From Rebecca billardiae RCC1528 (lineage: Eukaryota > Protista > Haptophyta): a stretch of 64,000 nucleotides of DNA. Made by a program: the position numbers and the translations under genes. Positions 1-20,135 of the stretch are shown here, one piece after another. How positions within the stretch are numbered: position 1 is the first letter of the stretch; every line of letters starts with the position of its first letter. The DNA is taken from positions 124,001 to 188,000 of the forward strand of contig OZ251240.1 in NCBI GenBank assembly GCA_965240325.2, given 5' to 3'. Below the pieces are notes generated by a model. The model ran no database searches and was not told the origin of the DNA. It was given only the letters and a program-made list of their open reading frames with translations.

Positions 1-841
1 ACTCCCTGGCCATTCTGACGAGTGGGTGGCTGCTTGGCCAGCTCTCCATGCTGGGCTGTGGTGCCATCCAGAGTGCGCATGTGCAGCAGCCCAGGTGGGT
101 GCAGCGAGGGGTGCGGCAGGCAGCAGTGGGTGGTCAGCTTGAAAATCCATGCAGGCCAGCCACCAGCAGCTAGGCTGCAGAGCTCTTGGCTGCACCAGCC
201 CCACTCCAGCCCCCTCAAGTCGGGTGGCTGGCCACCCTCGGGGTGTGTCAGCGGGTGCTGCTGCTGGCCTCCCAGTGCAGGGGAGCTGACCCAACTGGTC
301 CTTGCGCAGGTGGGGGCGCGGGATTGGGCACTGTGCCACAGCAGCTGCATCCCATGAGCTCCCCCCCAGGTGGCATGCAGCCCTCCCTAGGGGGTACCAG
401 ATCCACTGCCAAGCACAATTTAGGCCTGATCTGTGCGGGCACACGGCCCGCGACCAGTGACGACAAGCCTGCGGCAGGATCTGGCCCGAGCTGCGACAGG
501 CTGTACGCCTGCAGCCGCGTGACCTGCTGGTGTGCCCAACTCCAGCCCACGCGCGCTGGCGGCTGGGGCTGACGCGCTGGGTCGAAACCGTCGTGCACGG
601 GCAGTGGGGGCCGCCTGGATCAGCCCAGGGGGACAGGGTGAGCAGTGGCGTGCAGCTCAGTCAGAATGTGACGTTTAATTGTTGAGACCCCTGTATTGCC
701 CGATCCAAGTAGTACTGTACACGACTCGTCTCGGTCCGTCAGTCGTGGGGCCGCGCCCGGCGTGCGTAGTATACCGCCCGCGCGAGTCGAGACACGATGA
801 TGAGTGCCAGTGGTATGCACAGCGCGCACGCGTTCCACCAG

Positions 842-3800
842 TCAGCGGTGACTCGTCTTGATCTGGCTGGCAGACGGTCCGAGCGCGGAGGCGGACGAGA
901 GAGACGCGCCCGCCATCGCGCCGGACGAGCGCGTGGAGGCCAGGTGCCCGTGGAAGCGGTCCTGCTGCTCCACCTCTACGCCCCGCACGCGCGTCGCGTC
1001 GCGTGTGAGGACCCGTCGCGCGACGGTCGGCGTGCGGGGCGCAGCGCGGAGGCGGTGGCATCCGGAGGGCGTTACACTTGGCGCGCGTCAGCGGCGCAGG
1101 CGGCAGCAGCCGGGCGCGCGCACACGCACACGCGCGCTGGTCGTGCGGCGGGCGCCCGCGAGCGCGCACCGTCGGCCATCTCGTTGGCCACGTTGCGCAG
1201 CCGCAGCGCCAGCTCGCGGTTCGGGCTGAGGCGGCCGCTGGGGTCGGTCGTCATGCCTGCGCATCCGCGGCGCGCGGGCAGCACCGCACGCGCCGTCAGT
1301 CGGTGGTGGCGCGCATGCGCCGGGGCGGGCGCGCGCGGCGGCTGCGGCCGTGGCGCGTACCCGCGCGCTGCTGGTGCGCTGCCACGCGCGACGCCGCCCC
1401 CGGCGAGGCCGGCGGCGGGCGCAGCGACGAGTGCACCGAGGGCGCGGCCGACGTACGCGGCGGCGACAGGTGCCGCGAGCGCGCGTCGGCCACGCCCACG
1501 GTGCCCAGGCCGTGCCGCCGCGCGCCCGCGCTGCCGCCGCGCGCGCGCGCGCGGCGCTGGATCGCGCGCGCCGCGTCGTCGCGCGCGAGCCCCGGCGCGT
1601 GCTCCGCGCCCCTCTGCTGCGCGCGCTGCTGCTCGAGGTGCAGCTCGACGTACTCGGCCCAGCTGATCCGCCCGCTGCCGTCGCGGTCGGCGCGCGCGAA
1701 CGCGGCGTCGACCGCGCTCTGCGGCACGGCGGCGCCCGAAGCGCGCAGGCACGCGCCCAGCTCCTGCTTGGAGATGGCGCCCGAGCAGTTGGTGTCGTAC
1801 GCCTCAAACGTGCCGCGCAGCTCGCGCAGCCTGTGCGCGGGCAGGCCCGGCTGCGCGCGCGCGCGCGGCACCGCCGGCGGCGCGCCGTACCGCCTCGGCG
1901 CGCCGCCGCGCGGCGTGCCCGCGGGCGTGGCGCGCGCCGAGGCGGAGCTGCGCGGCGTGGGCGGCGCGCTCGGCCCGCGGCTGCGCTTGGCGCGCACGCG
2001 CGCGCGCGCGCGGGCCGGCGGGCGGGGAGGCGCGGTCGCGCGCGTCGTGAGACGACCGCGCTCGCGGTCGCGCGCGCGGGCGCCGCGGCCGCGGCGTGGC
2101 TCACCTGGAGCGGCGCGGCATGCCGTACGGGTGCGGCTGCAGCGGCTGCTGCTGCGCGTGCGGCGCGCCGAGCGAGGCGCGCGACGCGCCCGCGCGCGCC
2201 GCGCCGCCGGCGTCGATGAGCGTGCGCGCGTCCGCCATCGCGGCGAGGTCGACGAGCTCCGCCTCGAGCAGCGCCTGCCGCCGCTCGAACCCCTGCTGCT
2301 GCGCGCGCAGCTCGCCCACCTCCGCCTCGAGCTGGCCGGCGAGCACGGTCGCGGCCGCCGCGCGCCTGGCGAGCGCGGCCGCCTGCGCCTCCGCCTCGCG
2401 CCGCCTGTCCGCCTCGTCGTACAGCGCGTCGCGCGCCTGCCCGAGCTGCGCGCGCAGCTCGTCGGCCTCGCGCTTGCGCGCGGCCGCCTCCTTGCGCGCG
2501 CGCTCGGCGGCGGACACCTGCGCCTCCACGCGGCCGGCCGGCCGGCCGGGCGCGGCGCCGCCGGGCGCGGCGGCGGCGTGGTACCGCGGCGCGTGCGCGC
2601 CCGAGCGCGCGCGCAGCTCGGCGGCCAGGCTGGCCGCGCGGCCGTCGAGCGAGCCCGCGCTCACGCCCGCGCCGAGCGCGCCGCCCGTGCCGTGCAGCCG
2701 CTCGAGCAGCGTGGCGCGCTCGAGCGCGCTCGCCAGCTGCTCCTCCAGCTGGCGGCGCACCGCCTGCTCGCGCGCGAGCTGCGCGGCGAGCGCCGAGCGC
2801 TCGTTCTCGACAGCGCTCAGGTGCGCGCGCACGCTCGACGCGCCCAGGCCCGCGGCCGGGTGCGCGCGGCCGGCCGAGCCCGAGCGCCGGCTCGGCGAGC
2901 CGCGCCGCCCGGCGGACGCGCCGCCCGCGCCGCCGGCGCGCGCGTGCAAGCGGTTGGCCAGCTCGCGGAACTCTGCAAAAGAGACCGGGTGCCGCCCCAC
3001 GCCGCCGCTCGGCGGCGCGGGCCTCCCGAGCTTGGCGAGCGCGGCGGACACGGCGCGCGCGTCCGCGCGCACGCCGACGCCGCGCAGCGCGTGCGGCAGC
3101 AGCGACGCGTCCACGGTCCCCGCGCGCTCGAGGTCGTACGCGTCGAACGAGCGGCGCAGCCACGCCTCGGGCAGCGAGCCGCCATCGGCGCTCGCCGCGT
3201 TGGCGCGCGCGCCCGCGCTCGCCGCGCCGAGCGCGTGCAGCTCGGCGTACTCGGCAAAGCTCACCCGGCCGTCGCCGTCGCCGTCGGCCTTGGCGAACAC
3301 GGCGTCGACGGTCGGCCCGCTCGCGTCCAGGCCGGCCGCCTCGAGGGCGCGCCTCATCTCCTGCTTGCTGATCGAGCCAGAGCCGTCGCGGTCGTACTGC
3401 GCAAAGGACGCGCGCAGCTCGGCGAGCTTGGGCGCGCTCAGCCCGAGCACGGCGACGCGCGCGTCGTCGGACGGCGCCGAGCCTGCGCCTCGCGCGGCCC
3501 CGCCGAGCACGCTCAGCTCGGCGTACTCGGCGAAGCTGATCTTGCCGTCGCCGTCCGCGTCCGCCTTGGCGAACGCCGCGCTCACCGCCTCGTCGGCGGC
3601 CGACACGCCCTGCGCCTCGAGCGCGCGCCGCATCTCGGTCCGCGTGATCGAGCCGCTGTTGTTGCGGTCGTACCGGGCGAACGACTCGCGCAGCTCGGCC
3701 AGCCGAGAGCCGCTCAGCCCGAGCGCGGCGACGCGCTGCTCGTCCGTGCGGCCGGATGCCGCTCGCTGCCCGCCCACGGCGGGTGGCGGCGCCGACGAGG

Positions 3801-6800
3801 GGCCGCGCGCTCTGCCCAGCTCGCTCAGCTCGCAGTACTCGGCGAAGCTGATCTTGCCGTCGCCGTCCGCGTCCGCCTTGTCGAACGCCGCGCTCACCGC
3901 CTCGCTCGCGGCCGACACGCCCTGCGCCTCGAGCGCGCGCCGCATCTCGGTCCGCGTGATCGAGCCGCTGTTGTTGCGGTCGTACCGGGCGAACGACTCG
4001 CGCAGCTCGGCCAGCCGAGAGCCGCTCAGCCCGAGCGCGGCGACGCGCTGCTCGTCCGTGCGGCCGGGCGGCGCTGGCTGTGACGCTGCGATGGGCGGTG
4101 GCTGTGCCACTGCCGCGGGCTGCGGCGGAGGCGCAGGTGCCGCGGACGAGCGGGTAGCCTCGCCAAGCACGCTCAGCTCGGCGTACTCGGCGAAGCTGAT
4201 CTTGCCGTCGCCGTCCGCGTCCGCCTTGTCGAACGCCGCGCTCACCGCCTCGCTCGCGGCCGACACGCCCTGCGCCTCGAGCGCGCGCCGCATCTCGGTC
4301 CGCGTGATCGAGCCGCTGTTGTTGCGGTCGTACCGGGCGAACGACTCGCGCAGCTCGGCCAGCCGAGAGCCGCTCAGCCCGAGCGCGGCGACGCGCTGCT
4401 CGTCCGTGCGGCCGGGCGGCGCTGGCTGTGACGCTGCGATGGGCGGTGGCTGTGCCACTGCCGCGGGCTGCGGCGGAGGCGCAGGTGCCGCGGACGAGCG
4501 GGTAGCCTCGCCAAGCACGCTCAGCTCGGCGTACTCGGCGAAGCTGATCTTGCCGTCGCCGTCCGCGTCCGCCTTGTCGAACGCCGCGCTCACCGCCTCG
4601 CTCGCGGCCGACACGCCCTGCGCCTCGAGCGCGCGCCGCATCTCGGTCCGCGTGATCGAGCCGCTGTTGTTGCGGTCGTACCGGGCGAACGACTCGCGCA
4701 GCTCGGCCAGCCGAGAGCCGCTCAGCCCGAGCGCGGCGACGCGCTGCTCGTCCGTGCGGCCGGGCGGCGCTGGCTGTGACGCTGCGACGGGCGGGGGAGC
4801 AGCGGCAGTCGTCGGCGGCGGCAGCGCTGCCGACGAGGGGCCGCGCGCTCTGCCCAGCTCGCTCAGCTCGCAGTACTCGGCGAAGCTGATCTTGCCGTCG
4901 CCGTCCGCGTCCGCCTTGGCGAACGCCGCGCTCACCGCCTGGTCGGCGGCCGACACGCCCTGCGCCTCGAGCGCGCGCCGCATCTCGGTCCGCGTGATCG
5001 AGCCGCTGTTGTTGCGGTCGTACCGGGCGAACGACTCGCGCAGCTCGGCCAGCCGAGAGCCGCTCAGCCCGAGCGCGGCGACGCGCTGCTCGTCCGTCGA
5101 TGCAGATAGAATGGCCGGCAGCTGCTCGTGGTTCGATGCTGACGGCGCGGGCGGAGCGGCAGGAGCCTCGGCAGCGCGCACGCGCTGCAGAGCAGCGAGC
5201 GCGCGCACGCTGACGTGCAGTACGCCGGCGGCACGGTCGCGTTCGTCGAGGAGCTCGAGCGGCGCGCCGACGAGGTCGGCGCCGGTGCGGAGCAGCTCGG
5301 CCAGCAGGACCACGGCCTCGCCGAGCGGCAAGGCCGACGGTGCGCTCGGGTCGATGAGCGTGAAGCGCACGGCCGAGTCCGACTTGAGCGTGGAGCCGAG
5401 CGCACGTGCGAGCTTCGCCCATTCCTCGCTCGCCGGCTTGAGCTCAAATGTGGTGCTGAATCCGAAGGCCAGCTTGCGACGCGGCAGCAGCGCCCGCGTG
5501 CGTGGCGGCGGTGCGCGGAGCCCGACGGCATCCACGACGACCGCCACGCTGCCCGCGCGATCTGCACGCCGCCCCCGCTGGAGCGTGAGCTCGTCGACGC
5601 TGACGGACACGGCCGCGGCGCCCGTCTCGTGCGCCCCGGCCGGCGGGGGCTGGCCGGCTACGGCGGCACCACTCGCACCGGCAGCGCCTTGGCCTGCGAT
5701 GCGCTGCTGCACGTCGCGCAGCAGGGGCAGGGCGCGCAAGCCCACAGCCAAATCAGCAATCGGCGTGCCGAACGGGTCGACTAGCTCGATCGGCGAGCCG
5801 TCAGGCAAGTCCGCCCCTTTCGCAAGCATCGACTCAAGGTTGACGACGCCCTCGGCCACCAGGCCGCCATCCGGACGCGTGTCGCGCACAGTGAAGCACA
5901 CGTCCGAGTCGCTGTGCTCTGGGGTGCGCAGCGCCTTCTCGAGCAGCTGCCACGCGGCGCCGTCGCGCTCGACGGGCAGATGCGAGCTGAAGCCGAAGTC
6001 CACCTGCGCGCGCCCGTCGTCAGGGAGGCGGTGCGCCGGCGTGCTCAGGGCCGACTCACTGATGCCCATCACGTCCACATCCACCGCGACCTCACGCACG
6101 CCGTACGGAGGCGCCGTGCGCCAGGAAAGCCGGCCCACGGCGACGGAGACCGCCACGCCGGCCTTGGACAGGTACGCGGCATCCCGATCCCCCACAGCGG
6201 CGGGGCCCTGGGAGCTCACCGTTCCGGCCAACACCGAGCGCAGCGCGTCCACGGCGCGCACGCTCACCACCAGCTCGCCCAGCAGCCCGCCGCCGCCCGT
6301 GCGCTCGAGCTGCACCGGCTCGTCCTGCTTGTCGCGCCCGCGCTCGAGCAGCTGCTCCAGCACCACGCTCGCCTCGCCCAATGGCGCCGCCGAGCCCTCG
6401 CGGCTCGTGTCGAGCAGCCGGAAGCGCACGACCGAGTCGGCCCGCGTCGCCGAGCGCAGCGCGCGCTCCACCTGCGCCCACTCCGCGCTGCCGCTCGACA
6501 GCACCACGCCCGTCGAGAAGTCGAAGTTGAGCTTGCGCCGACGCAGCCGCGGCTCGGAGCGCGGCGCGGGCGAGCGCAGACCCATCACGTCCACCTCCAC
6601 CGCCACGCTGCGCACGCGCTCGCTCACGCCCGAGCTCGCGAGCGCGAGCGCGCCCACGCGCACGTCGATCTCGCCCGACTTGAGCGCCGGCGCCGACGGC
6701 ACGCTGCCGCCCTGCGCCTCGATCGACTGCTTGACCGCGCGCAGCAGCGGCAGCGCGTGCACGCCCACGCGCAGGTCGGCGAGCGCGACACCGGACGCGT

Positions 6801-9800
6801 CCACCAGCTCGATCGGTGTGCCGTCGGCGAGGTCGGCGCTGCTCGTCAGCATCGCCTCGAGGTTGACGAAGCCCTCCGCCACGATGCCGCCGTCCGGGTG
6901 CGCGTCGCGCACCGTGAAGAACACGTCCGAGTCGCCCGCGTCCGCCGTGCGCAGCGCGCGCGCGAGCATGCGCCACGCGCCGCCCTTGCGCGACACCGGC
7001 AGGTGCGCCGCGTACCCGAAGGCGACCGCCGCGCCGTCCGCACCCAGCGGGCGCACGGGCGACGAGAGCATCGACTCGCTCAGGCCCATGATGTCCACGT
7101 CCACCGCCACCTCGCGAACGGCCGCCGGCGGGCTCGAGCGCCACGTGAGCCGGTCCACGCTCACCGCCACCGCCTTGCCCTCGCTCGCGAGCTGCGTCGA
7201 CTCGCGCGGCGGCGCCACGGCCACCGACGCGGCCACCGAGGACGCGGGCGACGCGAGCACCGAGCGCAGCGCGTCGACGGCGCGCACGCTCACCACCAGC
7301 TCGCCCAGCAGCCCGCCGCCGCCCGTGCGCTCGAGCTGCACCGGCTCGTCCTGCTTGTCGCGCCCGCGCTCGAGCAGCTGCTCCAGCAGCACGCTCGCCT
7401 CGCCCAATGGCGCCGCCGAGCCCTCGCGGCTCGTGTCGAGCAGCCGGAAGCGCACGACCGAGTCGGCCCGCGTCGCCGAGCGCAGCGCGCGCTCCACCTG
7501 CGCCCACTCCGCGCTGCCGCTCGACAGCACCACGCCCGTCGAGAAGTCGAAGTTGAGCTTGCGCCGACGCAGCCGCGGCTCGGAGCGCGGCGCGGGCGAG
7601 CGCAGACCCATCACGTCCACCTCCACCGCCACGCTGCGCACGCGCTCGCTCACGCCCGAGCTCGCGAGCGCGAGCGCGCCCACGCGCACGTCGATCTCGC
7701 CCGACTTGAGCGCCGGCGCCGACGGCACGCTGCCGCCCTGCGCCTCGATCGACTGCTTGACCGCGCGCAGCAGCGGCAGCGCGTGCACGCCCACGCGCAG
7801 GTCGGCGAGCGCGACACCGGACGCGTCCACCAGCTCGATCGGTGTGCCGTCGGCGAGGTCGGCGCTGCTCGTCAGCATCGCCTCGAGGTTGACGAAGCCC
7901 TCCGCCACGATGCCGCCGTCCGGGTGCGCGTCGCGCACCGTGAAGAACACGTCCGAGTCGCCCGCGTCCGCCGTGCGCAGCGCGCGCGCGAGCATGCGCC
8001 ACGCGCCGCCCTCGCGCGACACCGGCAGGTGCGCCGCGTACCCGAAGGCGACCGCCGCGCCGTCCGCACCCAGCGGGCGCACGGGCGACGAGAGCATCGA
8101 CTCGCTCAGGCCCATGATGTCCACGTCCACCGCCACCTCGCGAACGGCCGCCGGCGGGCTCGAGCGCCACGTGAGCCGGTCCACGCTCACCGCCACCGCC
8201 TTGCCCTCGCTCGCGAGCTGCGTCGACTCGCGCGGCGGCGCCGCGGCCACCGACGCGGCCACCGAGGACGCGGGCGACGCGAGCACCGAGCGCAGCGCGT
8301 CGACGGCGCGCACGCTCACCACCAGCTCGCCCAGCAGCCCGCCGCCGCCCGTGCGCTCGAGCTGCACCGGCTCGTCCTGCTTGTCGCGCCCGCGCTCGAG
8401 CAGCTGCTCCAGCACCACGCTCGCCTCGCCCAATGGCGCCGCCGAGCCCTCGCGGCTCGTGTCGAGCAGCCGGAAGCGCACGACCGAGTCGGCCCGCGTC
8501 GCCGAGCGCAGCGCGCGCTCCACCTGCGCCCACTCCGCGCTGCCGCTCGACAGCACCACGCCCGTCGAGAAGTCGAAGTTGAGCTTGCGCCGACGCAGCC
8601 GCGGCTCGGAGCGCGGCGCGGGCGAGCGCAGACCCATCACGTCCACCTCCACCGCCACGCTGCGCACGCGCTCGCTCACGCCCGAGCTCGCGAGCGCGAG
8701 CGCGCCCACGCGCACGTCGATCTCGCCCGACTTGAGCGCCGGCGCCGACGGCACGCTGCCGCCCTGCGCCTCGATCGACTGCTTGACCGCGCGCAGCAGC
8801 GGCAGCGCGTGCACGCCCACGCGCAGGTCGGCGAGCGCGACACCGGACGCGTCCACCAGCTCGATCGGCGTGCCGTCGGCGAGGTCGGCGCTGCTCGTCA
8901 GCATCGCCTCGAGGTTGACGAAGCCCTCCGCCACGATGCCGCCGTCCGGGTGCGCGTCGCGCACCGTGAAGAACACGTCCGAGTCGCCCGCGTCCGCCGT
9001 GCGCAGCGCGCGCGCGAGCATGCGCCACGCGCCGCCCTCGCGCGACACCGGCAGGTGCGCCGCGTACCCGAAGGCGACCGCCGCGCCGTCCGCACCCAGC
9101 GGGCGCACGGGCGACGAGAGCATCGACTCGCTCAGGCCCATGATGTCCACGTCCACCGCCACCTCGCGAACGGCCGCCGGCGGGCTCGAGCGCCACGTGA
9201 GCCGGTCCACGCTCACCGCCACCGCCTTGCCCTCGCTCGCGAGCTGCGTCGACTCGCGCGGCGGCGCCGCGGCCACCGACGCGGCCACCGAGGACGCGGG
9301 CGACGCGAGCACCGAGCGCAGCGCGTCGACGGCGCGCACGCTCACCACCAGCTCGCCCAGCAGCCCGCCGCCGCCCGTGCGCTCGAGCTGCACCGGCTCG
9401 TCCTGCTTGTCGCGCCCGCGCTCGAGCAGCTGCTCCAGCAGCACGCTCGCCTCGCCCAATGGCGCCGCCGAGCCCTCGCGGCTCGTGTCGAGCAGCCGGA
9501 AGCGCACGACCGAGTCGGCCCGCGTCGCCGAGCGCAGCGCGCGCTCCACCTGCGCCCACTCCGCGCTGCCGCTCGACAGCACCACGCCCGTCGAGAAGTC
9601 GAAGTTGAGCTTGCGCCGACGCAGCCGCGGCTCGGAGCGCGGCGCGGGCGAGCGCAGACCCATCGCGTCCACCTCCACCGCCACGCTGCGCACGCGCTCG
9701 CTCACGCCCGAGCTCGCGAGCGCGAGCGCGCCCACGCGCACGTCGATCTCGCCCGACTTGAGCGCCGGCGCCGACGGCACGCTGCCGCCCTGCGCCTCGA

Positions 9801-12800
9801 TCGACTGCTTGACCGCGCGCAGCAGCGGCAGCGCGTGCACGCCCACGCGCAGGTCGGCGAGCGCGACACCGGACGCGTCCACCAGCTCGATCGGCGTGCC
9901 GTCGGCGAGGTCGGCGCTGCTCGTCAGCATCGCCTCGAGGTTGACGAAGCCCTCCGCCACGATGCCGCCGTCCGGGTGCGCGTCGCGCACCGTGAAGAAC
10001 ACGTCCGAGTCGCCCGCGTCCGCCGTGCGCAGCGCGCGCGCGAGCATGCGCCACGCGCCGCCCTCGCGCGACACCGGCAGGTGCGCCGCGTACCCGAAGG
10101 CGACCGCCGAGCCGTCCGCGCCCAGCGGGCGCACGGGCGACGAGAGCATCGACTCGCTCAGGCCCATGATGTCCACGTCCACCGCCACCTCGCGAACGGC
10201 CGCCGGCGGGCTCGAGCGCCACGTGAGCCGGTCCACGCTCACCGCCACCGCCTTGCCCTCGCTCGCGAGCTGCGTCGACTCGCGCGGTGGAACCGCGGCC
10301 ACCGAGGACGCGGGCGACGCGAGCACCGAGCGCAGCGCGTCGACGGCGCGCACGCTCACCACCAGCTCGCCCAGCAGCCCGCCGCCGCCCGTGCGCTCGA
10401 GCTGCACCGGCTCGTCCTGCTTGTCGCGCCCGCGCTCGAGCAGCTGCTCCAGCAGCACGCTCGCCTCGCCCAATGGCGCCGCCGAGCCCTCGCGGCTCGT
10501 GTCGAGCAGCCGGAAGCGCACGACCGAGTCGGCCCGCGTCGCCGAGCGCAGCGCGCGCTCCACCTGCGCCCACTCCGCGCTGCCGCTCGACAGCACCACG
10601 CCCGTCGAGAAGTCGAAGTTGAGCTTGCGCCGACGCAGCCGCGGCTCGGAGCGCGGCGCGGGCGAGCGCAGACCCATCACGTCCACCTCCACCGCCACGC
10701 TGCGCACGCGCTCGCTCACGCCCGAGCTCGCGAGCGCGAGCGCGCCCACGCGCACGTCGATCTCGCCCGACTTGAGCGCCGGCGCCGACGGCACGCTGCC
10801 GCCCTGCGCCTCGATCGACTGCTTGACCGCGCGCAGCAGCGGCAGCGCGTGCACGCCCACGCGCAGGTCGGCGAGCGCGACACCGGACGCGTCCACCAGC
10901 TCGATCGGCGTGCCGTCGGCGAGGTCGGCGCTGCTCGTCAGCATCGCCTCGAGGTTGACGAAGCCCTCCGCCACGATGCCGCCGTCCGGGTGCGCGTCGC
11001 GCACCGTGAAGAACACGTCCGAGTCGCCCGCGTCCGCCGTGCGCAGCGCGCGCGCGAGCATGCGCCACGCGCCGCCCTCGCGCGACACCGGCAGGTGCGC
11101 CGCGTACCCGAAGGCGACCGCCGAGCCGTCCGCGCCCAGCGGGCGCACGGGCGACGAGAGCATCGACTCGCTCAGGCCCATGATGTCCACGTCCACCGCC
11201 ACCTCGCGAACGGCCGCCGGCGGGCTCGAGCGCCACGTGAGCCGGTCCACGCTCACCGCCACCGCCTTGCCCTCGCTCGCGAGCTGCGTCGACTCGCGCG
11301 GTGGAACCGCGGCCACCGAGGACGCGGGCGACGCGAGCACCGAGCGCAGCGCGTCCACGGCGCGCACGCTCACCACCAGCTCGCCCAGCAGCCCGCCGCC
11401 GCCCGTGCGCTCGAGCTGCACCGGCTCGTCCTGCTTGTCGCGCCCGCGCTCGAGCAGCTGCTCCAGCAGCACGCTCGCCTCGCCCAATGGCGCCGCCGAG
11501 CCCTCGCGGCTCGTGTCGAGCAGCCGGAAGCGCACGACCGAGTCGGCCCGCGTCGCCGAGCGCAGCGCGCGCTCCACCTGCGCCCACTCCGCGCTGCCGC
11601 TCGACAGCACCACGCCCGTCGAGAAGTCGAAGTTGAGCTTGCGCCGACGCAGCCGCGGCTCGGAGCGCGGCGCGGGCGAGCGCAGACCCATCACGTCCAC
11701 CTCCACCGCCACGCTGCGCACGCGCTCGCTCACGCCCGAGCTCGCGAGCGCGAGCGCGCCCACGCGCACGTCGATCTCGCCCGACTTGAGCGCCGGCGCC
11801 GACGGCACGCTGCCGCCCTGCGCCTCGATCGACTGCTTGACCGCGCGCAGCAGCGGCAGCGCGTGCACGCCCACGCGCAGGTCGGCGAGCGCGACACCGG
11901 ACGCGTCCACCAGCTCGATCGGCGTGCCGTCGGCGAGGTCGGCGCTGCTCGTCAGCATCGCCTCGAGGTTGACGAAGCCCTCCGCCACGATGCCGCCGTC
12001 CGGGTGCGCGTCGCGCACCGTGAAGAACACGTCCGAGTCGCCCGCGTCCGCCGTGCGCAGCGCGCGCGCGAGCATGCGCCACGCTGTGCTGTCTGGCCGC
12101 ACCGCGAGCCGCGCCGCGTGCTCGAAGACGACAGGAGCGCGGCCGTCGCCGGTCGGCCGCGTCGGCGTCGTGATCAGCGCCGACGACAGGCCCATCACGT
12201 CCACGTCCACCTCGATCCGCTCAACCGCCAGCGGCACGTCCGCGCGCCACGTGAGGCGGTGCACAGCGATGCCGAGCGCGTCTTCGCCCGCGCCCGCCGC
12301 GCTCGCGGCGAGCGGCGGCTCGGGCGGCACGGACGCGCCGCTGGCCGCCACGCCTTGGCGCGGCGGTGGCGGGGCGCCAGTGCCCGCGCCGAGCGCGCCG
12401 CCGCCCGCGGCGGGCGCCGCCGCGCCGGCCTTGACCGCGCGCAGCGCGTCGAGCGCGCGCAGTGTGACGACCAGCTCTCCGACCGCCGAGCCGCGCGCGC
12501 TCACGAGCTGCAGGACCTCGTCCTCCTGGTCGCGGCCGCGCTCGAGCAGCTGCTGGAGCGCGGAGGCGGCCTCGCCGAGCACCGTCTGCTGCCCGCCGCC
12601 CACGTCGAGCAGCGTGAAGCGCACCTCCGACTCCGCCCTCGTGCCCGAGGTGAGCGCGCGCTCCAGCCTCGCCCACTCGGCGCTGCCGGCCGCGAGCTCG
12701 ACGGCGGTGTCGTAGTCGAAGCGCACGCGGCGGCGGCTGAGCACGGGCTCGGAGCGCGGCCTGGGCGTGCGCAGGCCCATCACGTCGATCTCGACCGCCA

Positions 12801-14010
12801 GCTCGCGCGCCGCGCCGTCGCGCGCGCCCGTCGCCCACGTGAACGCGCCGACGCCGACGCGCATGCGCTGCGTCGACACGCGCGGCGACGCGGGCACGAC
12901 GCCGCCCTGCCGCTCGATCGATGCCTGCACGGCGCGCAGCAGGGGCAGCGCGACGACGCCGCAGGACAGCTCGCCGATGGTCGCGCCCTCGAGGTCGTGC
13001 AGCTCGATCGTCGCGCCGTCCGCCATGTCGCGCGCCGACGCGAGCTGGTCCTCCAGGTTGACAAACGCCTCGCCCAGCACCGCGCCGCCGCCCGCGCGCG
13101 CCGTGTCGCGCAGCGTGAAGAACACGTCCGTGTCGGAGCGCTCGGGCGTGCGCAGCGCGCGCTCGAGCAGGCGCCACGCGCGCGAGCCGCTGGCCACGTC
13201 GATGTGCGACACGTACTCAAAGTACACCGAGCGCTCCTCCGCGCCCACCGCGCGCGGCGGCGTGGTGAGCAGCGAGTGCGTCAGGCCCATCACGTCCACG
13301 TCCACCGCCACCTCGCGCACGCCCGCCGGCGCGCGCGCGCGCCACGAGACGCGCGAGACGGAGACCTTGATGGCCTCGCCGGCGGCGGCGCGCGCGGCCG
13401 ATCGCTGCGCCGCCTCCGCGTCCGCGCCGCCCGGCCGCTTGCTCGGGTCGATCGGCTTGAGCGAGGGGAACGGCGCCAGCGGCTCGGGCGGCGCCGCGTC
13501 GGCCGCGGTGCGCGCGGGCGGCACGGCGAGCGTGGCGGCGGTCGTGCCCATCGAGCCGTTCAGCGCCCGAAGCGCGCGCACGCACGTGACGCTCACGCGC
13601 ACCTCGGCGATTGGCTGGCCGTGCGCGTCCTCAAACGTGAGCGGCTCGTCCACCATGTCGCGCTCGGTACTCAGGAGCGACGGCAGCGAGATGCGCGCGG
13701 AGCCGACGCGCTCGCGCTGCGCGGGCTCGCGCAGCGTGAGGACGACGACGAGGGCCGACCGCCGAGGCGTCGAGAGCCGGTGCGCCGCGTCGTTCCACGC
13801 GCTCGTCGCGGGCACGAGCTCGACCGAAACGCGGTGCCGGAAGTCGATCGGCGCGTCGGTGCGGTGCGGCGCGGACGGCGCGGGCGGCTCGAGGCCGGCG
13901 ACGTCGATCTCGACGAGCACGCGCTCGAAGAGCGACGAGATGTCCCGCGCGAAGTCGCCGAGCCAGCGGAGCTCGCCGGCGACGACGTTGATGCGCTCCG
14001 CCTCCGTCAT
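842..14010 (-). CDS. Giant (~4,248 aa) protein: ~17 tandem RPGRIP1 C-terminal (RID)-like C2 domains, ~8 EF-hand pairs, coiled coil, IQ-like motif. Exons 14010-2105, 1980-1361, 1256-1170, 975-842
   Basis: First ATG of the 4011-aa ORF is at 14010 (14136 is GTG). Three GT-AG introns (2104-1981, 1360-1257, 1169-976) splice in frame to a TGA at 844-842. The repeated domain V.VDVMGL...F.F...VRF.L.D...LGEA.V.LEQLLERGRD...LGELVVSVRA.DALR resembles RPGR1_C. Canonical EF loops DRNNSGSITRTE and DADGDGKISFAE. Confidence 0.85.
3500..5100. repeat. Five near-identical EF-hand-pair modules (312-348 bp period)
   Basis: taccgggcgaacgactcgcg recurs at ~3671, 3983, 4331, 4679 and 5021. Confidence 0.95.
6232..12085. 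repeat. Near-identical intragenic tandem array, ~5.7 units of 1014/1026 bp, each encoding two C2-like domains
   Basis: The agcatgcgccacg anchor recurs at ~6965, 7991, 9017, 10043, 11057 and 12071 (spacing 1026,1026,1026,1014,1014). Units differ by a few SNPs and a 12-bp indel. Confidence 0.97.
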
Positions 14011-14372
14011 GCTGGCGGCAAGGCGCCAAGGCGTGTGTTTTGGCCACTTGAACTCAGCCGTCGGCAGGCGGCAGGCAGACCGTCGTCGTTCCGCTCGCGC
14101 GCCGTGCCGCCGTCGTCGGCGCGACTCTGTGTTCACATCATTCTGATGACAGTCACGATGTCACTGTCATATGCACTGGGCCGAAATCCCTAATCGACGC
14201 GGTCAGTTGGGGCGCGCACTTCGCCCTATGATGACTGACGCACAGTGACGACGACAACAGCCGCGTCAGTTGCAGCTTTTTGGCTGCCACTTTCGCCGCC
14301 GCTGCTTGAAGCTGCAAGCGGGGGCTTGGGACAGCTGGTGCGAGGGCGCCTCGACTCGCCAGCGGCCCGGCG

Positions 14373-14835
14373 ATGGCGCAGCAGGGTGCCACGCTGCAGA
14401 ACTACAACAATGATCTCGTCAGATGTGCGTGCCGCGCGCGCGCGCGCTCCAGCCCCCGCCGCGCGGTCGTTGCGCGCCCCCGCGGCGGCGGCGGCGGTCG
14501 CGCTGACTCGCGGGCTCGCTCCCCGTCCGCCGTCCTCGCCGGGCCACTCAGGCATCGAGGACTTGCGGGAGAAGCGCGAGGAGGTGAACCGCGCGATCGC
14601 CGCGGACGAGGAGGAGAAGGCGAAGATCCAGAACGACCTTCGCATCCTCACCGAGAGGCTCTCGCGGCTAAACGACGGGCTGGCGCGCAAGATCTCCTCG
14701 CGCAACGAGTACGACCGCACGATCCAGGAGACGGAGGCGGCGTACCAAAAGATCTTAGAGAGCTCGCAGACGCTGCTGCACGTGCTCAAGCGCGAGAGCG
14801 TCAACCTCTCGAAGAAGAAGCAGGTCTCCTCCTGA
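14373..14835 (+). CDS. SSNA1: SSNA1/NA14/DIP13 microtubule- and basal-body-associated coiled-coil protein, 111 aa. Exons 14373-14424, 14552-14835
   Basis: Spliced product [28 protein letters not shown]...[32 protein letters not shown] matches the SSNA1/DIP13 sequence. GT-AG intron 14425-14551. Confidence 0.95.
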
Positions 14836-15683
14836 GCGGCCTGCGCAGCAGCGTGCGCGCGCCGCGGGCGCGCCTGGCTGCCGGGGGCGCCGCCGGGCGC
14901 GAGCGCCGCGCGGGGGGCGCGGCGGCCATGCGGGGCACCCGGCCGCTGGGGATGCCGAGCGGCCGCGCCGAGCGACGACGCACGTCGGCGCCGTGCGCGG
15001 GCTGCGAGGCCGGGGCTCGCGAGCCCGGGCGTGCCGGCGTGTCGCCATCGGCCAGCCGGATGGCTTTGGGGCGCGAGCCGGCTGAGCCGCCGCGCCGGGG
15101 CGGCCATCACCGCGAGCGCGTCGCGGCGCCAGCACATCAGCTTAGGACACCGTCGGCCGCGGAGCGCCCTCGGTGGCGCTCGGCGCATGGCCCATGGCCG
15201 GCCGGCTGGTTCTGGTGAGCTGCGCCGAGCTCAGCGTCGTGCGCTGCGGCACTGCCAAGGCCGCCCATTCAGCCGCTGATCGTGGCCGCGTGCCGCCCGC
15301 CGCACGGGCCGGGAGTGGTCGTCAAGCCGGCGGCGCCGCCGCCGGGCAGGCCACGGCACACGTGCGGGCCTCCGATGAACACTCGCCACTAAGTTGACTT
15401 AGTCGTCAGCATTGTACTGTAAACGTGGTCGCCCCCGGGGAACCGTCGTCGTGGTCGTCGTCGCGACCACTGCCCGCCCGGCGCCCGGCTTACTGTGCTG
15501 ATGTAGTATCATGTAGTACGTACTAAGGCTACAGTTTACTAAGAATAAGAGACGCACACAGTAAGCCGACTATCGTCAGCAGTCGCGGGCGAATATGCTT
15601 ATTTGCTGGCTCGCTCGCCCTGCGCGCGTACGGTACACCAACGGTGCCGACGGGCGGCTCGCGCGGCGGGCGCCATCGCCGCC

Positions 15684-18600
15684 ATGCGACCGCACGTGCC
15701 GCCGGCGCAGCCGGCGACGGCGGGGCTCGGCGCGGAGGCGATCGGCGCGTCGGGCACGGCGGACGACCCGATCGACCTGTCGCGCAAGAAGCGGCGGCTG
15801 TACGCCGCGCACGACGCGGCGCAGCCGGTGGGCGGCGCGCTCGGCGAGAGGGCGGCCGCCTCCGAGCCGGGCGCGCGCGAGTGCGGCGCGCACGGCGCGC
15901 GCGCGCACGGCGCGCCGGAGCCCGGCGGCGCGCCCGCCGCCCGCCCGCCGGACGCCGCGCCCCGCCCGCCCGCGCCGGACTGGAGCGCCGCGCAGTCCGC
16001 GCTGCTGCGCGTGGACGATCTGATAGGCCGGCTGGCCGAGTGGCAGCAGCGCGCGGAGCCGGGCCTGTACGGCGCGTGGGAGGCGCACCGCGCGGAGTGG
16101 CGCGCGCGGAGCCAGCTCGCGGCCTCGCACGCCGCGCTCGAGCAGCTCCTGCACCAGCTCGTCTGCGAGCGCCTCCCCCTGCAGCTGGCCGCGCGCGCCG
16201 TGCCCGCCTCGCTGCTGTTCGAGTCAGGCTCGCCGTGGGCGGCGATGCGCACGCCGCAGCAGGGGCTGGCGGGCGTGGTCGCGCTGGAGGAGGCGCTGCG
16301 GGCGTGGGCGGCGGAGCGCGCGCCGGGCGTGCTGCCGCCCGCGCCGCACCCGCCGCTGACCGCCGCCGTCCCGCCCGCGCCGACGCCGGAGCGCGCACGG
16401 CCCGAGGGCGGCGGCGCGCGCGCGGCCGAGCCGCCACCCGTGCGCGCCGACGGCCGCGGCGGCGAGCAGGCGGCGCGCGCGCAGCTCGCGCCGTCGCCCA
16501 CCACGCGGCTGGCGGCGGCGGCGGCCTCGACGCCGGCCCCTTCGCCGCTGGTGCAGCCGAGCGTCTCGGTCACGCCGCCGCCGCCCGCCGCCGCGCCGCG
16601 CGCGCCGCCGCCGCGCGCGCCGCCGCCCGCGCGCGCCGACGCGGCGCCGAGCGCGGCAGCCGCTGGCGGCGCGCGCGCCGAGGCGCCTGCGCGCCCCGAC
16701 GGCCGCGCCGGCGAGCAGGCGGCGCGAGCGCAGTTCGCGCCGTCGCCCACCACCCGCCTGGCGGCGGCCGCAGCGTCCGCCGCGCCGCCGCCACCGCCGC
16801 CACCGATCGCGCGGGCCGCGCCGCCGCAGCCGGCCGCGGCGGCGGTGGCGGTGGCGGCGCCCGCGCGCGCCGACACCGCGCCGCGCGCGGCAGCCGGCGG
16901 CGGCGGGCACGCCGACTCGCCCTCGCGCCCCGACGACCCCGCCGGCGCGCAAGCGGCGCGGGCGCAGCTCCCGCCGTCGCCCACACCGCGCCGCCTGGCG
17001 GCGCCGAGCGCGCCCGCCGCCGCGCGTCCGCCGTCACAGCCGCCGCCGGGCTCCGACCCGCCGCCGGCGCCGCGCTCGCCACGGCCGCCCGGCGCGGCGC
17101 CCGCGGCGGCTGGCGGCGCGAGCGCCGCGAGCGCGCCGGCCGTGGGCGCACCGGCCGCTGCCACGCCCGCCGGCGCGGCCGCCGCGCCCGCCGCGCAGAA
17201 CGCGCCCGCGCCGAGCGCGGCCGGCTGCGCGGCGGGCGGCGGTGCGCGCTGCTGCGGCGCTGCTTGCTGCAGCACCGCGCTGGTGCGCGCACCGCCCGGC
17301 GGCGCGTCGGGCGCGGCCCTGCCCGTGGCGGGCAGCCTGCCCGCGCGGCCCGCCCCCGCGGCGGCGCACGCCGCGGGCTCGAGCGCGGACGACGCCGCCG
17401 CTTGCGCCGCAGCCGCCGCGTACGCCCGGCTGGGGCTGCGCGTGCTCGCGCGCCGCCAGCTCTCAGCCAACTGGCTCAAGAAGCGCGTGGTGCTGCTGGG
17501 GCAGCAGGAGTGGCAGGCGCTCAGGCGGAGGGCAGGCGCGGGGGGCGGGCCGGGCGCGGCGGGGGGCGCGCTGCCGCGGCTGCTGCTGCGCGCGCTGGAC
17601 AAGGGCGAGCTCGAGCAGCCGTGCGCGCAGCCGCAGCCGCAGCCGCGCGACCAGCCGCCTGCCGGCGCGCCATCGGCTGGGCGGTGCGGCGGCGGCCCCG
17701 CGGCGCAGGCGTGGGCGCAGGAGTGGGAGGTGGCGCTCTCGCTCGGCTACCCGCGGCTGCACCGCGTCGGCCCGCTGCTGCACGGGCTGCTACACCGGGG
17801 CATGGGCGTGGGCGACTACTTCGTGCTGCTCTGCAGAGACGCCCAGCGCTGCCAGCACGAGCCAAGCGGCGCGGGCGGCGCGGCGGGCGGCGCGCCCGCC
17901 GCCCTCGGCTCGGGCTGTGCGCCGTGCGCCGAGCTGCTCGTCACGTGGGAGCGCGCGGCGCTGGTGGACGCCAACAGGCGGCTGGGGTACGGGCCTGCCT
18001 GTGAAGCGCAGGGGCAGCCGCAGGGGCAGCAGGCCGAGCACAGCAGCGCCGCGCTCCGGCTGCTGCTCGGACCGGCCGGCGGCGCGCCGCGCGCGCCGCG
18101 GCCGCGCGCCGCGCCGCGGCGCCGCGCGGCGGCGGGGGCCGTGGGCGGCAGCGGCAGCGGCAGTGCGCTGGCCACGGCCATGGCTACGGCCACGCCCCTC
18201 ACGGCCACGCCCCTCACGGCCACGCCCCTCGGCAACGACCACGCGGAAGCGGCGGCGGCGGCGGCGGCGTTCCCGCGCGCGGCGACGCGCGCGGTGGCGC
18301 GGCCGGCGGCGGCGAGGCCCATCGGCGTCGAGGGCGTCGAGGAGCTGGACACCGACTCGGACGGCTCGGACGGCGCGCCCTCCGCGCGCGCGCCCGCGCC
18401 GCCCGCGCCGTGGCGCTGCTCCGCGCTCAGCGCGCCCGCGGCGCGCGCCACGCCCGCCGCTCCGGCCGCGCCGCCCGCGCCTTACCAGCTCGAGTGGGCG
18501 GCGCAGCTGAGCGCGCGCGCGGCGCGGAACGACGCGTGGGGCGTGGCGCACGCGCTGTACACCATGCTGCGCGCGCAGCCCCCCGCCTGCCCCGCCGGCG

Positions 18601-19999: not shown

Positions 20000-20135
20000 C
20001 TAGCCCGCGCTCCCCGCCTCGCCCGCGGGCGCACGCACGTCCGCGTGTCAGCGTAGCGTGGCGGCGCCGCTCAGCCGGTGTCTGTCGGCCGGCCTCTTCT
20101 GACGAACCTGCGGACGCGCCGACGATCGCTGATTG

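What the first reader, a model, noticed from the sequence alone, without database searches (positions are those of the whole stretch)
842..14010. 4,250-aa protein built from ~17 RPGRIP1-type C2 domains and ~16 EF-hands
Seen: one N-terminal domain, eight alternating A/B pairs of a ~150-aa beta domain, seven EF-hand pairs (the last degenerate), a coiled coil, an eighth EF pair and an IQ-like AARAIQRRAR. Known: the RPGRIP1/RPGRIP1L C-terminal C2-like domain normally occurs once, in ciliary transition-zone scaffolds. Inference: a polymeric RID fused to a calmodulin-like array is an architecture I do not recognise. It could be a Ca2+-responsive filament or membrane-microtubule linker of the flagellar base or, in a haptophyte, the Ca2+-responsive haptonema.
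Basis: partly seen in the sequence, partly recalled or inferred. Interest (0 to 1): 0.85.

Follow-up and report, generated by a model that had tools for sequence, protein, structure and literature searches.

The report
Giant C2-array, EF-hand algal protein
A very GC-rich pavlovophyte (haptophyte) alga really does encode one roughly 4,250-residue protein with 17 copies of the protein-binding C2 domain of the ciliary-gate protein RPGRIP1 followed by eight calmodulin-like EF-hand pairs. The design is undescribed but conserved in related algae, and its location in the cell is untested.

Summary
On the minus strand, one stop-free exon (14010..2105) plus three short GT-AG-spliced exons ending at 842 encode about 4,248 aa.

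- **C2 units:** there are 17 homologous units of about 150 aa, one N-terminal unit and eight A/B pairs. Both A and B model with high confidence, and their best solved-structure match is the RPGRIP1 RPGR-interacting domain (4QAM_B, Z 17.7, versus about 13.5 for ordinary C2 domains).
- **EF-hands:** eight pairs carry 14 canonical Ca2+ loops. A helical region and a conserved AARAIQ motif follow.
- **Tandem array:** the central A/B pairs are a 1,014/1,026-bp DNA array at 99.3-99.9 % identity, so they amplified recently.
- **Relatives:** the architecture is not unique. A metagenome contig and Pavlovales sp. CCMP2436 carry smaller orthologues (hypothetical or auto-named proteins). True RPGRIP1L-type proteins of other haptophytes also carry 3-14 such domains.
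- **Earlier scan notes:** other arrays of this domain were reported elsewhere in this genome.
- **Membership:** it is not an RPGRIP1/RPGRIP1L orthologue, because the N-terminal C2 modules are absent.

A role at the flagellar base is inferred only. No RNA runs were listed, and the head-to-head SSNA1/DIP13 neighbour is not conserved in Diacronema lutheri. I classify it as a new variant of a known kind.

The parts
2105..14010 (-). Exon 1 (11,906 nt, 3,968 codons plus 2 nt). It holds the start ATG at 14010-14008, all 17 C2 units, EF pairs 1-7 and the helical region.
   Evidence: Stop-free translation; Pfam RPGR1_C and EF-hand families
13549..13995 (-). N-terminal divergent RID-type C2 unit (aa 6-154)
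   Evidence: Unit HMM hit; Pfam RPGR1_C 18.9 bits, below the cut-off; hhalign to the B profile 98.3 %, E 1.6e-14
5167..13374 (-). Eight alternating A/B pairs of RID-type C2 units (aa 213-2948). Linkers of 16-47 aa within the array are rich in Ala, Pro, Ser and Gly; a 58-aa linker joins the N unit to A1.
   Evidence: B units score 26-32 bits to PF18111 (cut-off 22.9) and A1 scores 22.5. AlphaFold2 pLDDT 93 and 95. 4QAM_B is the top match at Z 17.7 for both B and A.
6202..12321 (-). Tandem DNA array of six 1,026/1,014-bp copies, each one B unit plus the adjoining A unit. Copies 2-5 are 99.3-99.9 % identical to one another, copy 1 is about 98 % and copy 6 about 91 % identical to them.
   Evidence: the repeat finder; pairwise counts
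2926..5058 (-). EF-hand array (aa 2985-3695): six canonical pairs, partly a 348-bp tandem repeat at about 95 % identity, plus a degenerate seventh pair
   Evidence: A single pair matches the calmodulin C-lobe at E about 1e-17.
2209..2841 (-). Helical, probably coiled-coil region (aa 3724-3773 and 3827-3934)
   Evidence: Pro/Gly-free stretches and a crude heptad count; 44-56 % identical to the equivalent parts of L001 and L005. No coiled-coil predictor was run.
1981..2104 (-). Intron 1 (124 nt, CAG|GTGAGC ... GCGCAG|C), phase 2. The in-frame TGA at 2103-2101 lies inside it.
   Evidence: Sequence; frame check; a donor at the homologous position in L001
1361..1980 (-). Exon 2: EF pair 8 (1626-1844, two canonical loops) and the AARAIQ motif (1527-1574)
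   Evidence: Pfam EF-hand_7 E 1e-10; colinear homologous exons in L001 and L005
1257..1360 (-). Intron 2 (104 nt, GT-AG)
1170..1256 (-). Exon 3, encoding the conserved peptide RELALRLRNVANEMAD
   Evidence: the same peptide lies downstream in L001 (RELALRLRNLANDMAEG) and in L005 (RELTLRLYNIANEMAQ)
976..1169 (-). Intron 3 (194 nt, GT-AG). This boundary is the least certain.
   Evidence: It is the only in-frame AG acceptor among the positions tried (1000-961).
842..975 (-). Exon 4 (EVEQQDRFHG... to the TGA stop at 844-842)
   Evidence: VESQDRFR is conserved at the end of L001
14373..14835 (+). Divergent neighbour SSNA1/DIP13 (exons 14373-14424 and 14552-14835, 111 aa). Its ATG lies 362 bp from the giant gene's ATG.
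   Evidence: Exon 2 is 99 % identical to JGI/MMETSP SSNA1 (E 3.6e-46) and 97 % identical to the Diacronema lutheri and Pavlovales sp. CCMP2436 proteins.

Best explanation
**Shown.** This is one real nuclear gene of a pavlovophyte haptophyte, encoding a protein of about 4,248 aa with no hydrophobic run of 19 or more residues. It consists of 17 RID-type C2 beta-sandwiches joined by flexible linkers, seven calmodulin-C-lobe-like EF pairs plus one degenerate pair, a helical region and a conserved tail. The A/B di-domain predates the split from its relatives. The central five or so pairs arose by very recent tandem duplication.

**Inferred.** The RID-type C2 is known only as a Ca2+- and lipid-independent protein-binding module of transition-zone scaffolds. 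The array therefore most likely acts as a long multivalent docking scaffold at the flagellar base or transition zone. It would be held or dimerised through the C-terminal helical region. Ca2+ binding to the in-cis EF lobes would change its conformation or its partners, possibly through the AARAIQ helix.
For: - **One gene:** the ORF runs without a stop from the RID units into the EF-hands. The same order is seen in P0002, in P0023 across the B-unit to EF junction, and in L005.
- **3' exons:** they are colinear in L001 and L005, with a donor at the homologous site in L001.
- **RID identity by sequence:** PF18111 scores 223 bits. The unit profile hits only 4QAM_B in the PDB (E 2.3e-6). A 143-unit family profile gives 4QAM_B at E 2.2e-16, with dysferlin C2A next at E 0.004.
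- **RID identity by fold:** VIA-align gives Z 17.7 for both A and B. ESM Atlas puts fantom/RPGRIP1 clusters at the top.
- **Property of the RID:** it is a protein-protein module that binds neither Ca2+ nor phospholipid (PMC4519163).
- **Precedent:** EF-hands are attached to transition-zone C2 scaffolds in other protists (PMC3495828, PMC7093003).
- **EF-hands:** 14 canonical loops, and a single pair matches the calmodulin C-lobe at E about 1e-17.
- **Neighbour:** the gene shares a 362-bp divergent promoter region with SSNA1/DIP13. By general knowledge this is a basal-body and axoneme microtubule protein.
- **History of the units:** the unit tree shows old A and B clades and species-specific recent copies.
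Against: - No expression, localisation or binding data exist. No RNA run was listed.
- The protein lacks the coiled-coil, C2-C2_1 and PKC-type C2 part of RPGRIP1/RPGRIP1L. By general knowledge that part mediates their transition-zone interactions.
- The SSNA1 pairing is not conserved in D. lutheri.
- C2 folds serve many non-ciliary roles.
- The AARAIQ motif does not meet the full IQ consensus, and Pfam IQ gave no hit.
- Copy number rests on a single assembly of near-identical 1-kb repeats.
Confidence: 0.42

Rival explanations
1. It is a Ca2+-responsive elastic or contractile fibre component of another microtubular structure, such as the haptonema or flagellar roots, rather than of the transition zone.
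For: The protein is giant, modular and carries many EF lobes. Giant scaffolds work with Ca2+-binding proteins in ciliate contraction (PMC9946354, seen; abstract only). Haptonema coiling depends on Ca2+ (PMC6398456, title and abstract).
Against: Among the 187 family proteins examined, the RID+EF members that could be placed were Pavlovales or Pavlovales-like. The one other, P0125, is an unlabelled ENA fragment. None came from Chrysochromulina or Prymnesium, which by general knowledge have the long coiling haptonemata. Nothing links RID domains to microtubule binding.
Confidence: 0.13
2. It is a non-ciliary cytosolic Ca2+-regulated scaffold, for example cortical or trafficking-related. On this view haptophytes have recruited the RID-type C2 domain as a general protein-binding module.
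For: In haptophytes the domain occurs in several other contexts. Prymnesium P0081 combines LRRs with units. P0017 has units alone. Unchecked scan notes report arrays with LRRs or an NPHP1-like tail in this genome. The gene evolves fast: its nearest relatives are 44-53 % identical, while the neighbouring SSNA1 is 97-99 % identical.
Against: The characterised or Pfam-defined carriers of PF18111 that I know of or met here (RPGRIP1, RPGRIP1L and the haptophyte RPGRIP1L-type proteins) are of the transition-zone scaffold type. The partner domains noted in the scan (NPHP1-like, CEP104-like) are themselves ciliary.
Confidence: 0.3
3. It is partly an artefact. Either the unit count is inflated by mis-assembly of near-identical repeats, or the 3' exons belong to a separate gene.
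For: Copies 2-5 are 99.3-99.9 % identical over 1 kb. The CCMP2436 orthologue is broken by N gaps in exactly this kind of sequence. No transcript data are available.
Against: The copies differ by specific SNPs and a 12-bp indel (1,014 versus 1,026 bp) in an ordered pattern, and the frame is kept throughout. The exon order EF7, helical region, EF8, RELALRLRN is the same in three genomes.
Confidence: 0.1

Closest known systems
RPGRIP1 / RPGRIP1L (fantom, NPHP8), C-terminal RPGR-interacting domain (PF18111; PDB 4QAM chain B)
   Same: Every unit is a homologue of this type II C2 domain. Sequence profiles hit only or overwhelmingly 4QAM_B. Models of A and B superpose on it at Z 17.7, rmsd 2.4-2.5 A, over 154-156 residues.
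   Different: The animal proteins have one RID preceded by a coiled coil, C2-C2_1 and a PKC-type C2. This protein has 17 RIDs, none of those N-terminal modules, and a C-terminal EF-hand array.
Haptophyte RPGRIP1L-type proteins with multiplied RID: Prymnesium parvum KAL1530447.1 (2,984 aa), Diacronema lutheri KAG8468148.1 (1,546 aa) and the Tisochrysis-cluster protein P0164
   Same: They carry tandem arrays of the same domain (12-14, about 3 and about 6 units). The Prymnesium array also shows recent in-gene amplification.
   Different: They keep C2-C2_1 (and, in P0001 and P0164, a PKC-type C2), have no EF-hands and show no A/B alternation. Their units form a separate clade (97/98 support).
Unnamed orthologues: P0002 (JGI metagenome 3300036591, contig Ga0400246_002811) and Pavlovales sp. 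CCMP2436 KAJ1621945.1 / KAJ1621946.1 (partial models)
   Same: They have A/B-type RID units followed by EF pairs, a degenerate pair, the helical region, EF pair 8, the AARAIQ-like motif and the RELxLRL motif. Identity is 38-53 %.
   Different: They have fewer units (six in P0002) and fewer EF pairs. L001 has an extra intron in the helical region. The CCMP2436 locus is broken by gaps and shows EF pairs between blocks of units.
Paramecium RPGRIP1L with C-terminal EF-hands; NPHP1 and NPHP4 with EF-hands in some eukaryotes
   Same: These are transition-zone C2 scaffolds coupled in cis to EF-hands (PMC7093003, PMC3495828).
   Different: In Paramecium the EF-hands replace the RID rather than follow it, and they were dispensable for Ca2+-induced deciliation (PMC7093003).
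Multi-C2 proteins (extended synaptotagmins, ferlins)
   Same: They are strings of C2 beta-sandwiches and appear among the Foldseek matches.
   Different: Their match to single units is clearly weaker (Z 12-13.6). By general knowledge they are Ca2+- and lipid-binding PKC-type C2 domains with membrane anchors. Pfam C2 (PF00168) does not hit this protein, and no hydrophobic run of 19 or more residues was found.

Membership tests
RPGR1_C / RID-type C2 domain (Pfam PF18111) | Sequence match to the family model above its gathering score | tested here: met
   The whole protein scores 223.4 bits against a cut-off of 22.9, with 10 stretches. Scanned alone, the three distinct B units tested score 26-32 bits, A1 scores 22.5 and the N unit 18.9 (both under the cut-off), and A2, A3 and A8 gave no hit. 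The A and N units are tied to B by hhalign at 99.6 % and 98.3 %.
RPGR1_C / RID-type C2 domain (Pfam PF18111) | Type II C2 beta-sandwich closest to the solved RID (4QAM_B) | tested here: met
   The A model has pLDDT 95 and the A-B model pLDDT 93. 4QAM_B ranks first at Z 17.7 for each, about 4 Z units above generic C2 domains. C2 topology type was not checked separately.
RPGR1_C / RID-type C2 domain (Pfam PF18111) | Binds a protein partner (the RPGR RCC1-like propeller) and not Ca2+ or phospholipid | not testable with these tools
   The property is known for human RPGRIP1 (PMC4519163). The partner and ligands of these units are unknown.
RPGRIP1 / RPGRIP1L protein family (orthologue) | N-terminal coiled coil, C2-C2_1 (PF11618) and a central PKC-type C2 (PF00168) | tested here: not met
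   Neither family appears at E up to 1. Both are found in the haptophyte RPGRIP1L-type proteins P0001 and P0164, and C2-C2_1 is found in P0184.
RPGRIP1 / RPGRIP1L protein family (orthologue) | Localises to the ciliary transition zone | not testable with these tools
   No localisation or proteome data were found.
EF-hand / calmodulin-like Ca2+ sensors | Paired helix-loop-helix motifs with canonical 12-residue loops | tested here: met
   Pfam EF-hand_7 scores E 1.8e-92, and exon 2 scores E 1e-10. There are 14 PROSITE-pattern loops. One pair matches the calmodulin C-lobe at E about 1e-17. The seventh pair lacks the loop ligands.
EF-hand / calmodulin-like Ca2+ sensors | Binds Ca2+ and changes conformation | not testable with these tools
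   This needs a biochemical assay.
IQ calmodulin-binding motif (PF00612) | IQxxxRGxxxR consensus | tested here: not met
   Pfam IQ gave no hit on exon 2 at E up to 1. The sequence IQRRARARGGS keeps I, Q and R6 only. The AARAIQ core is conserved in L001 and L005, so it is a conserved motif of unproven kind.

The most novel reading that the evidence does not exclude
Haptophytes have rebuilt their flagellar gate around polymerised RID domains. RID arrays of variable, rapidly evolving length occur on the RPGRIP1L orthologue, on this EF-hand protein and, by unchecked scan notes, on an NPHP1-like protein. They would act as multivalent tethers or rulers for a repeated ligand. This pavlovophyte version adds seven calmodulin-like lobes that would make the tether switchable by Ca2+, for example in flagellar shedding or gating.
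Probability: 0.2. Interest if true: 0.8.

Novelty: new variant of a known kind. Interest (0 to 1): 0.58.

Why it matters
The RID is studied as a single-copy, disease-relevant docking domain of the ciliary gate. Finding it multiplied 3- to 17-fold shows that it can work as a repeat module, and that array length changes quickly. The multiplication occurs in several haptophyte proteins: once fused to a calmodulin-like array, and in true RPGRIP1L orthologues. That gives cilia biologists a natural experiment on valency in transition-zone scaffolds, and a candidate direct link between Ca2+ and the gate. It also warns annotators that such genes are split or truncated in current assemblies, as in CCMP2436.

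Tried and rejected
- **Word-indexed protein searches.** The whole C2 part and one A-B pair found nothing. This probably reflects the length window and low-complexity GC-rich words. The exhaustive profile search did find the family.
- **RNA evidence.** No run was listed, so read laying was not used and transcript structure is untested.
- **Synteny.** In D. lutheri, SSNA1 is head-to-head with an 842-aa LRR gene. Nothing else matches this window. The shared promoter is therefore only weak support for a ciliary role.
- **ESM Atlas feature search.** A query spanning the C2-EF junction gave only generic EF-hand or C2 clusters with scores under 0.9.
- **Spurious Pfam hits.** CDI, Dockerin, RHS and similar matches are repeat or low-complexity noise.
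- **Ordinary Ca2+/lipid-binding C2 array.** Rejected, because PF00168 gives no hit and the RID match is much the best.
- **RPGRIP1L orthologue.** Rejected, because the N-terminal modules are absent and a separate RPGRIP1L-type clade exists.
- **Limit of the survey.** Only the best 150 of 361 family hits, plus cluster members, were examined for EF-hands.
Full report
**Observation.** The feature is on the minus strand. Translation of 14136..2101 is open for 4,011 codons, and from the ATG at 14010 there are 3,969 codons without a stop. The DNA is 72-83 % G+C here, and other frames, including the antisense strand, are open for thousands of codons. ORF length is therefore no evidence in itself. The frame is established by domain content. 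Pfam finds RPGR1_C (PF18111) at E 2e-66 (223 bits, 10 stretches). It also finds the EF-hand families at E 1e-45 to 1e-92.

**The C2 units.**
- A conserved anchor motif (xVxVDVMGL) occurs 17 times.
- An HMM built from the units delimits 17 domains of about 150 aa. These are one N-terminal unit and eight A/B pairs, joined by Ala/Pro/Ser/Gly-rich linkers of 16-58 aa.
- Scanned alone, the three distinct B units tested pass the Pfam cut-off (26-32 bits against 22.9). A1 is just under it (22.5) and the N unit scores 18.9. A2, A3 and A8 gave no hit.
- Profile-profile comparison ties the types together. A versus B gives 99.6 % probability (E 5.6e-25, 32 % identity over 146 columns). The N unit versus B gives 98.3 % (E 1.6e-14).
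- A profile of ten units hits a single entry in the whole PDB, the RPGR-interacting domain of RPGRIP1 (4QAM_B, E 2.3e-6). A 143-unit family profile raises this to E 2.2e-16, with dysferlin C2A next at E 0.004.

**Fold.** AlphaFold2 was run on an A-B pair with 73 aligned rows, giving pLDDT 93.0 and pTM 0.61. The result is two confident beta-sandwiches with a less confident linker. An A unit alone, with 143 rows, gave pLDDT 95.1 and pTM 0.90.
- Foldseek returns tandem-C2 proteins and 4QAM_B.
- With VIA-align, 4QAM_B ranks first for the B unit (Z 17.7, rmsd 2.4 A, 156 residues). It also ranks first for the A unit (Z 17.7, rmsd 2.5 A, 154 residues).
- The next matches are generic C2 domains at Z 13.6 or below.
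- The ESM Atlas shape search puts fantom/RPGRIP1L and RPGRIP1 clusters first.

**EF-hands and tail.**
- Exon 1 carries six canonical EF pairs and a degenerate seventh pair. The next exon carries an eighth pair.
- Fourteen loops fit the PROSITE EF-hand pattern.
- A single pair matches the calmodulin C-lobe at E about 1e-17.
- Between pairs 7 and 8 lie two Pro/Gly-poor helical stretches (aa 3724-3773 and 3827-3934). I checked these only with a crude heptad count.
- The 'IQ-like' AARAIQRRARARG is present. It fits only part of the IQ consensus and gets no Pfam IQ hit.
- I found no hydrophobic run of 19 or more residues.

**Gene model.** The TGA at 2103-2101 lies inside a CAG|GTGAGC donor. Splicing to GCGCAG|C at 1981 (124 nt) continues the frame into EF pair 8. 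The total is 4,248 aa. Comparative data support this model.
- In the metagenome contig L001, the homologous ORF (P0002) is followed, in the same order and strand, by a helical-region exon.
- A GTGAGC donor sits at the homologous position.
- Next come an exon with an EF pair and ...ARVIQQR..., then RELALRLRNLANDMAEG, then VESQDRFR.
- Pavlovales sp. CCMP2436 (L005) shows the same order and the peptides AARAIQEQ and RELTLRLYNIANEMAQ.
- The joined protein was assembled only inside a local script, to check frame and length, and was not sent to any search or fold.
- No RNA run was listed for this DNA, so the transcript is unverified.

**Recent amplification.** Six copies of 1,026 or 1,014 bp tile 6202-12321. 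Copies 2-5 are 99.3-99.9 % identical to one another, copy 1 is about 98 % and copy 6 about 91 % identical to them. The copies differ by a few SNPs and a 12-bp indel that keeps the frame. The EF pairs also form a 348-bp array at about 95 % identity. The ordered differences argue for real copies, but the count rests on one assembly.

**Relatives.** An exhaustive profile search of 1.84 billion representative proteins found 361 proteins at E up to 1e-3. Many have several units.
- RPGRIP1L-type, named hits:
  - Prymnesium parvum KAL1530447.1 has 2,984 aa, with C2-C2_1, C2 and 12-14 RID units.
  - Diacronema lutheri KAG8468148.1 has 1,546 aa, with C2-C2_1 and about 3 RID units.
  - A member of the Tisochrysis lutea cluster (P0164) has 2,062 aa, with C2-C2_1, C2 and about 6 RID units.
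  - Chrysochromulina tobinii KOO35408.1 is partial, with 8 units.
- Polymerised RID is thus a haptophyte theme that includes true RPGRIP1L-type proteins.
- Among the 187 family proteins I held, four others also carry EF-hands after units:
  - P0002 (1,430 aa; pattern b-A-B-A-B-B plus three EF pairs; 44-49 % identical).
  - The adjacent CCMP2436 partial models KAJ1621945.1 and KAJ1621946.1.
  - One ENA fragment, P0125.
- A maximum-likelihood tree of 60 units separates this clade from the RPGRIP1L-type clade (97/98 support). The clade also includes the EF-less Prymnesium P0017. The tree recovers an A clade (96/95) and a B clade (87/90), each containing units of P0002, P0007 and P0009. The central copies of this gene, and units 4-12 of the Prymnesium protein, appear as separate, species-specific bursts.
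- The nearest relative is only 53 % identical, so this gene itself is not in the protein collections.

**Organism and neighbourhood.** The divergent neighbour at 14373-14835 is SSNA1/DIP13 (111 aa, two exons). Its second exon is 99 % identical to JGI/MMETSP sequences. It is 97 % identical to the D. lutheri and Pavlovales sp. CCMP2436 proteins. The genome is therefore a Pavlovales haptophyte close to, but distinct from, those two. The two start codons are 362 bp apart. In D. lutheri the head-to-head partner of SSNA1 is an unrelated 842-aa LRR gene, and nothing else is syntenic. The pairing is therefore weak evidence for co-function.

**Mechanism.**
- What is shown: a long string of protein-binding-type C2 modules, followed by calmodulin-like lobes, a helical region and conserved tail motifs, all in one reading frame, and conserved in at least three pavlovophyte-like genomes.
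- What is known from the literature:
  - The RID is a type II C2 domain that binds RPGR rather than Ca2+ or lipid, and was proposed as a cilia-specific interaction module (PMC4519163).
  - Transition-zone C2 scaffolds carry EF-hands in several protists (PMC3495828).
  - Paramecium RPGRIP1L has C-terminal EF-hands in place of the RID (PMC7093003).
- What I infer: a multivalent docking scaffold, modulated by Ca2+, most likely at the flagellar base. I put this at about 0.4.
- The rivals are a non-ciliary scaffold (about 0.3), a haptonema or root fibre (about 0.13), and a partial assembly or annotation artefact (about 0.1).

**Novelty and earlier notes.** No paper in the library holds both 'RPGRIP1L' and 'haptophyte'. 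Database relatives are 'hypothetical', 'C2 domain-containing' or 'Ca2+-binding EF-hand superfamily' proteins. The scan had already noted other RID arrays elsewhere in this genome: 12 units plus an NPHP1-like tail, six units plus LRRs and EF-hands, and a mosaic scaffold. I did not check those notes, except that a Prymnesium protein combining LRRs with units exists. I therefore rate this as a new variant of a known kind. It is of real interest to cilium evolution, but it has no functional evidence yet.

Noticed in passing
window 14373-14835 (+): A two-exon SSNA1/DIP13 gene lies head-to-head with the giant gene, with the two ATGs 362 bp apart. It is 97-99 % identical to Pavlovales homologues, which identifies the lineage of the genome.
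   Followed up: yes
window 1-20000, both strands: At 72-85 % G+C, non-coding frames stay open for thousands of codons. One example is the antisense ORF 2096..12715 (+) of 3,539 aa. Mechanical ORF lists are unreliable in this genome. The stretch 16-19 kb reaches 83-85 % G+C and was not examined.
   Followed up: no
P0001 (Prymnesium parvum KAL1530447.1), aa 1417-2890: Nine RID units of this RPGRIP1L-type protein are identical or nearly so. This is an independent recent in-gene amplification of the same domain in another haptophyte.
   Followed up: partly
L005 8640-16600 (Pavlovales sp. CCMP2436, MU631718.1): N gaps split the orthologue into three gene models, at least two of them labelled partial. 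The visible order is B, EF, EF, A, B, B', EF, gap, EF pairs, helical region, EF8. Either EF pairs are interleaved with C2 units in that species, or the scaffold is mis-ordered.
   Followed up: partly
L002 14497-14826 (-) (Diacronema lutheri JAGTXO010000011.1): A 2,980-aa gene about 4 kb from the D. lutheri SSNA1 gene has a weak RID-like match near its C-terminal end (35 % identity over 104 aa, E 1.6e-5). It is not the orthologue of this gene.
   Followed up: no
L001 4293-4444: The metagenome orthologue has an extra GT-AG intron inside the helical region. This genome has none there.
   Followed up: partly
P0081 (Prymnesium parvum KAL1507798.1, 3,744 aa): This protein combines about five RID-like stretches with leucine-rich repeats. 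It echoes the scan's note of an LRR-containing RID array in this genome.
   Followed up: partly
window 5167-12867 (-), B units: Pfam CDI (cyclin-dependent kinase inhibitor) scores 52 bits on the whole protein, but only because a short RRRKLNFDF-type stretch recurs in the B units. A single unit scores 14 bits, so the hit is spurious.
   Followed up: yes
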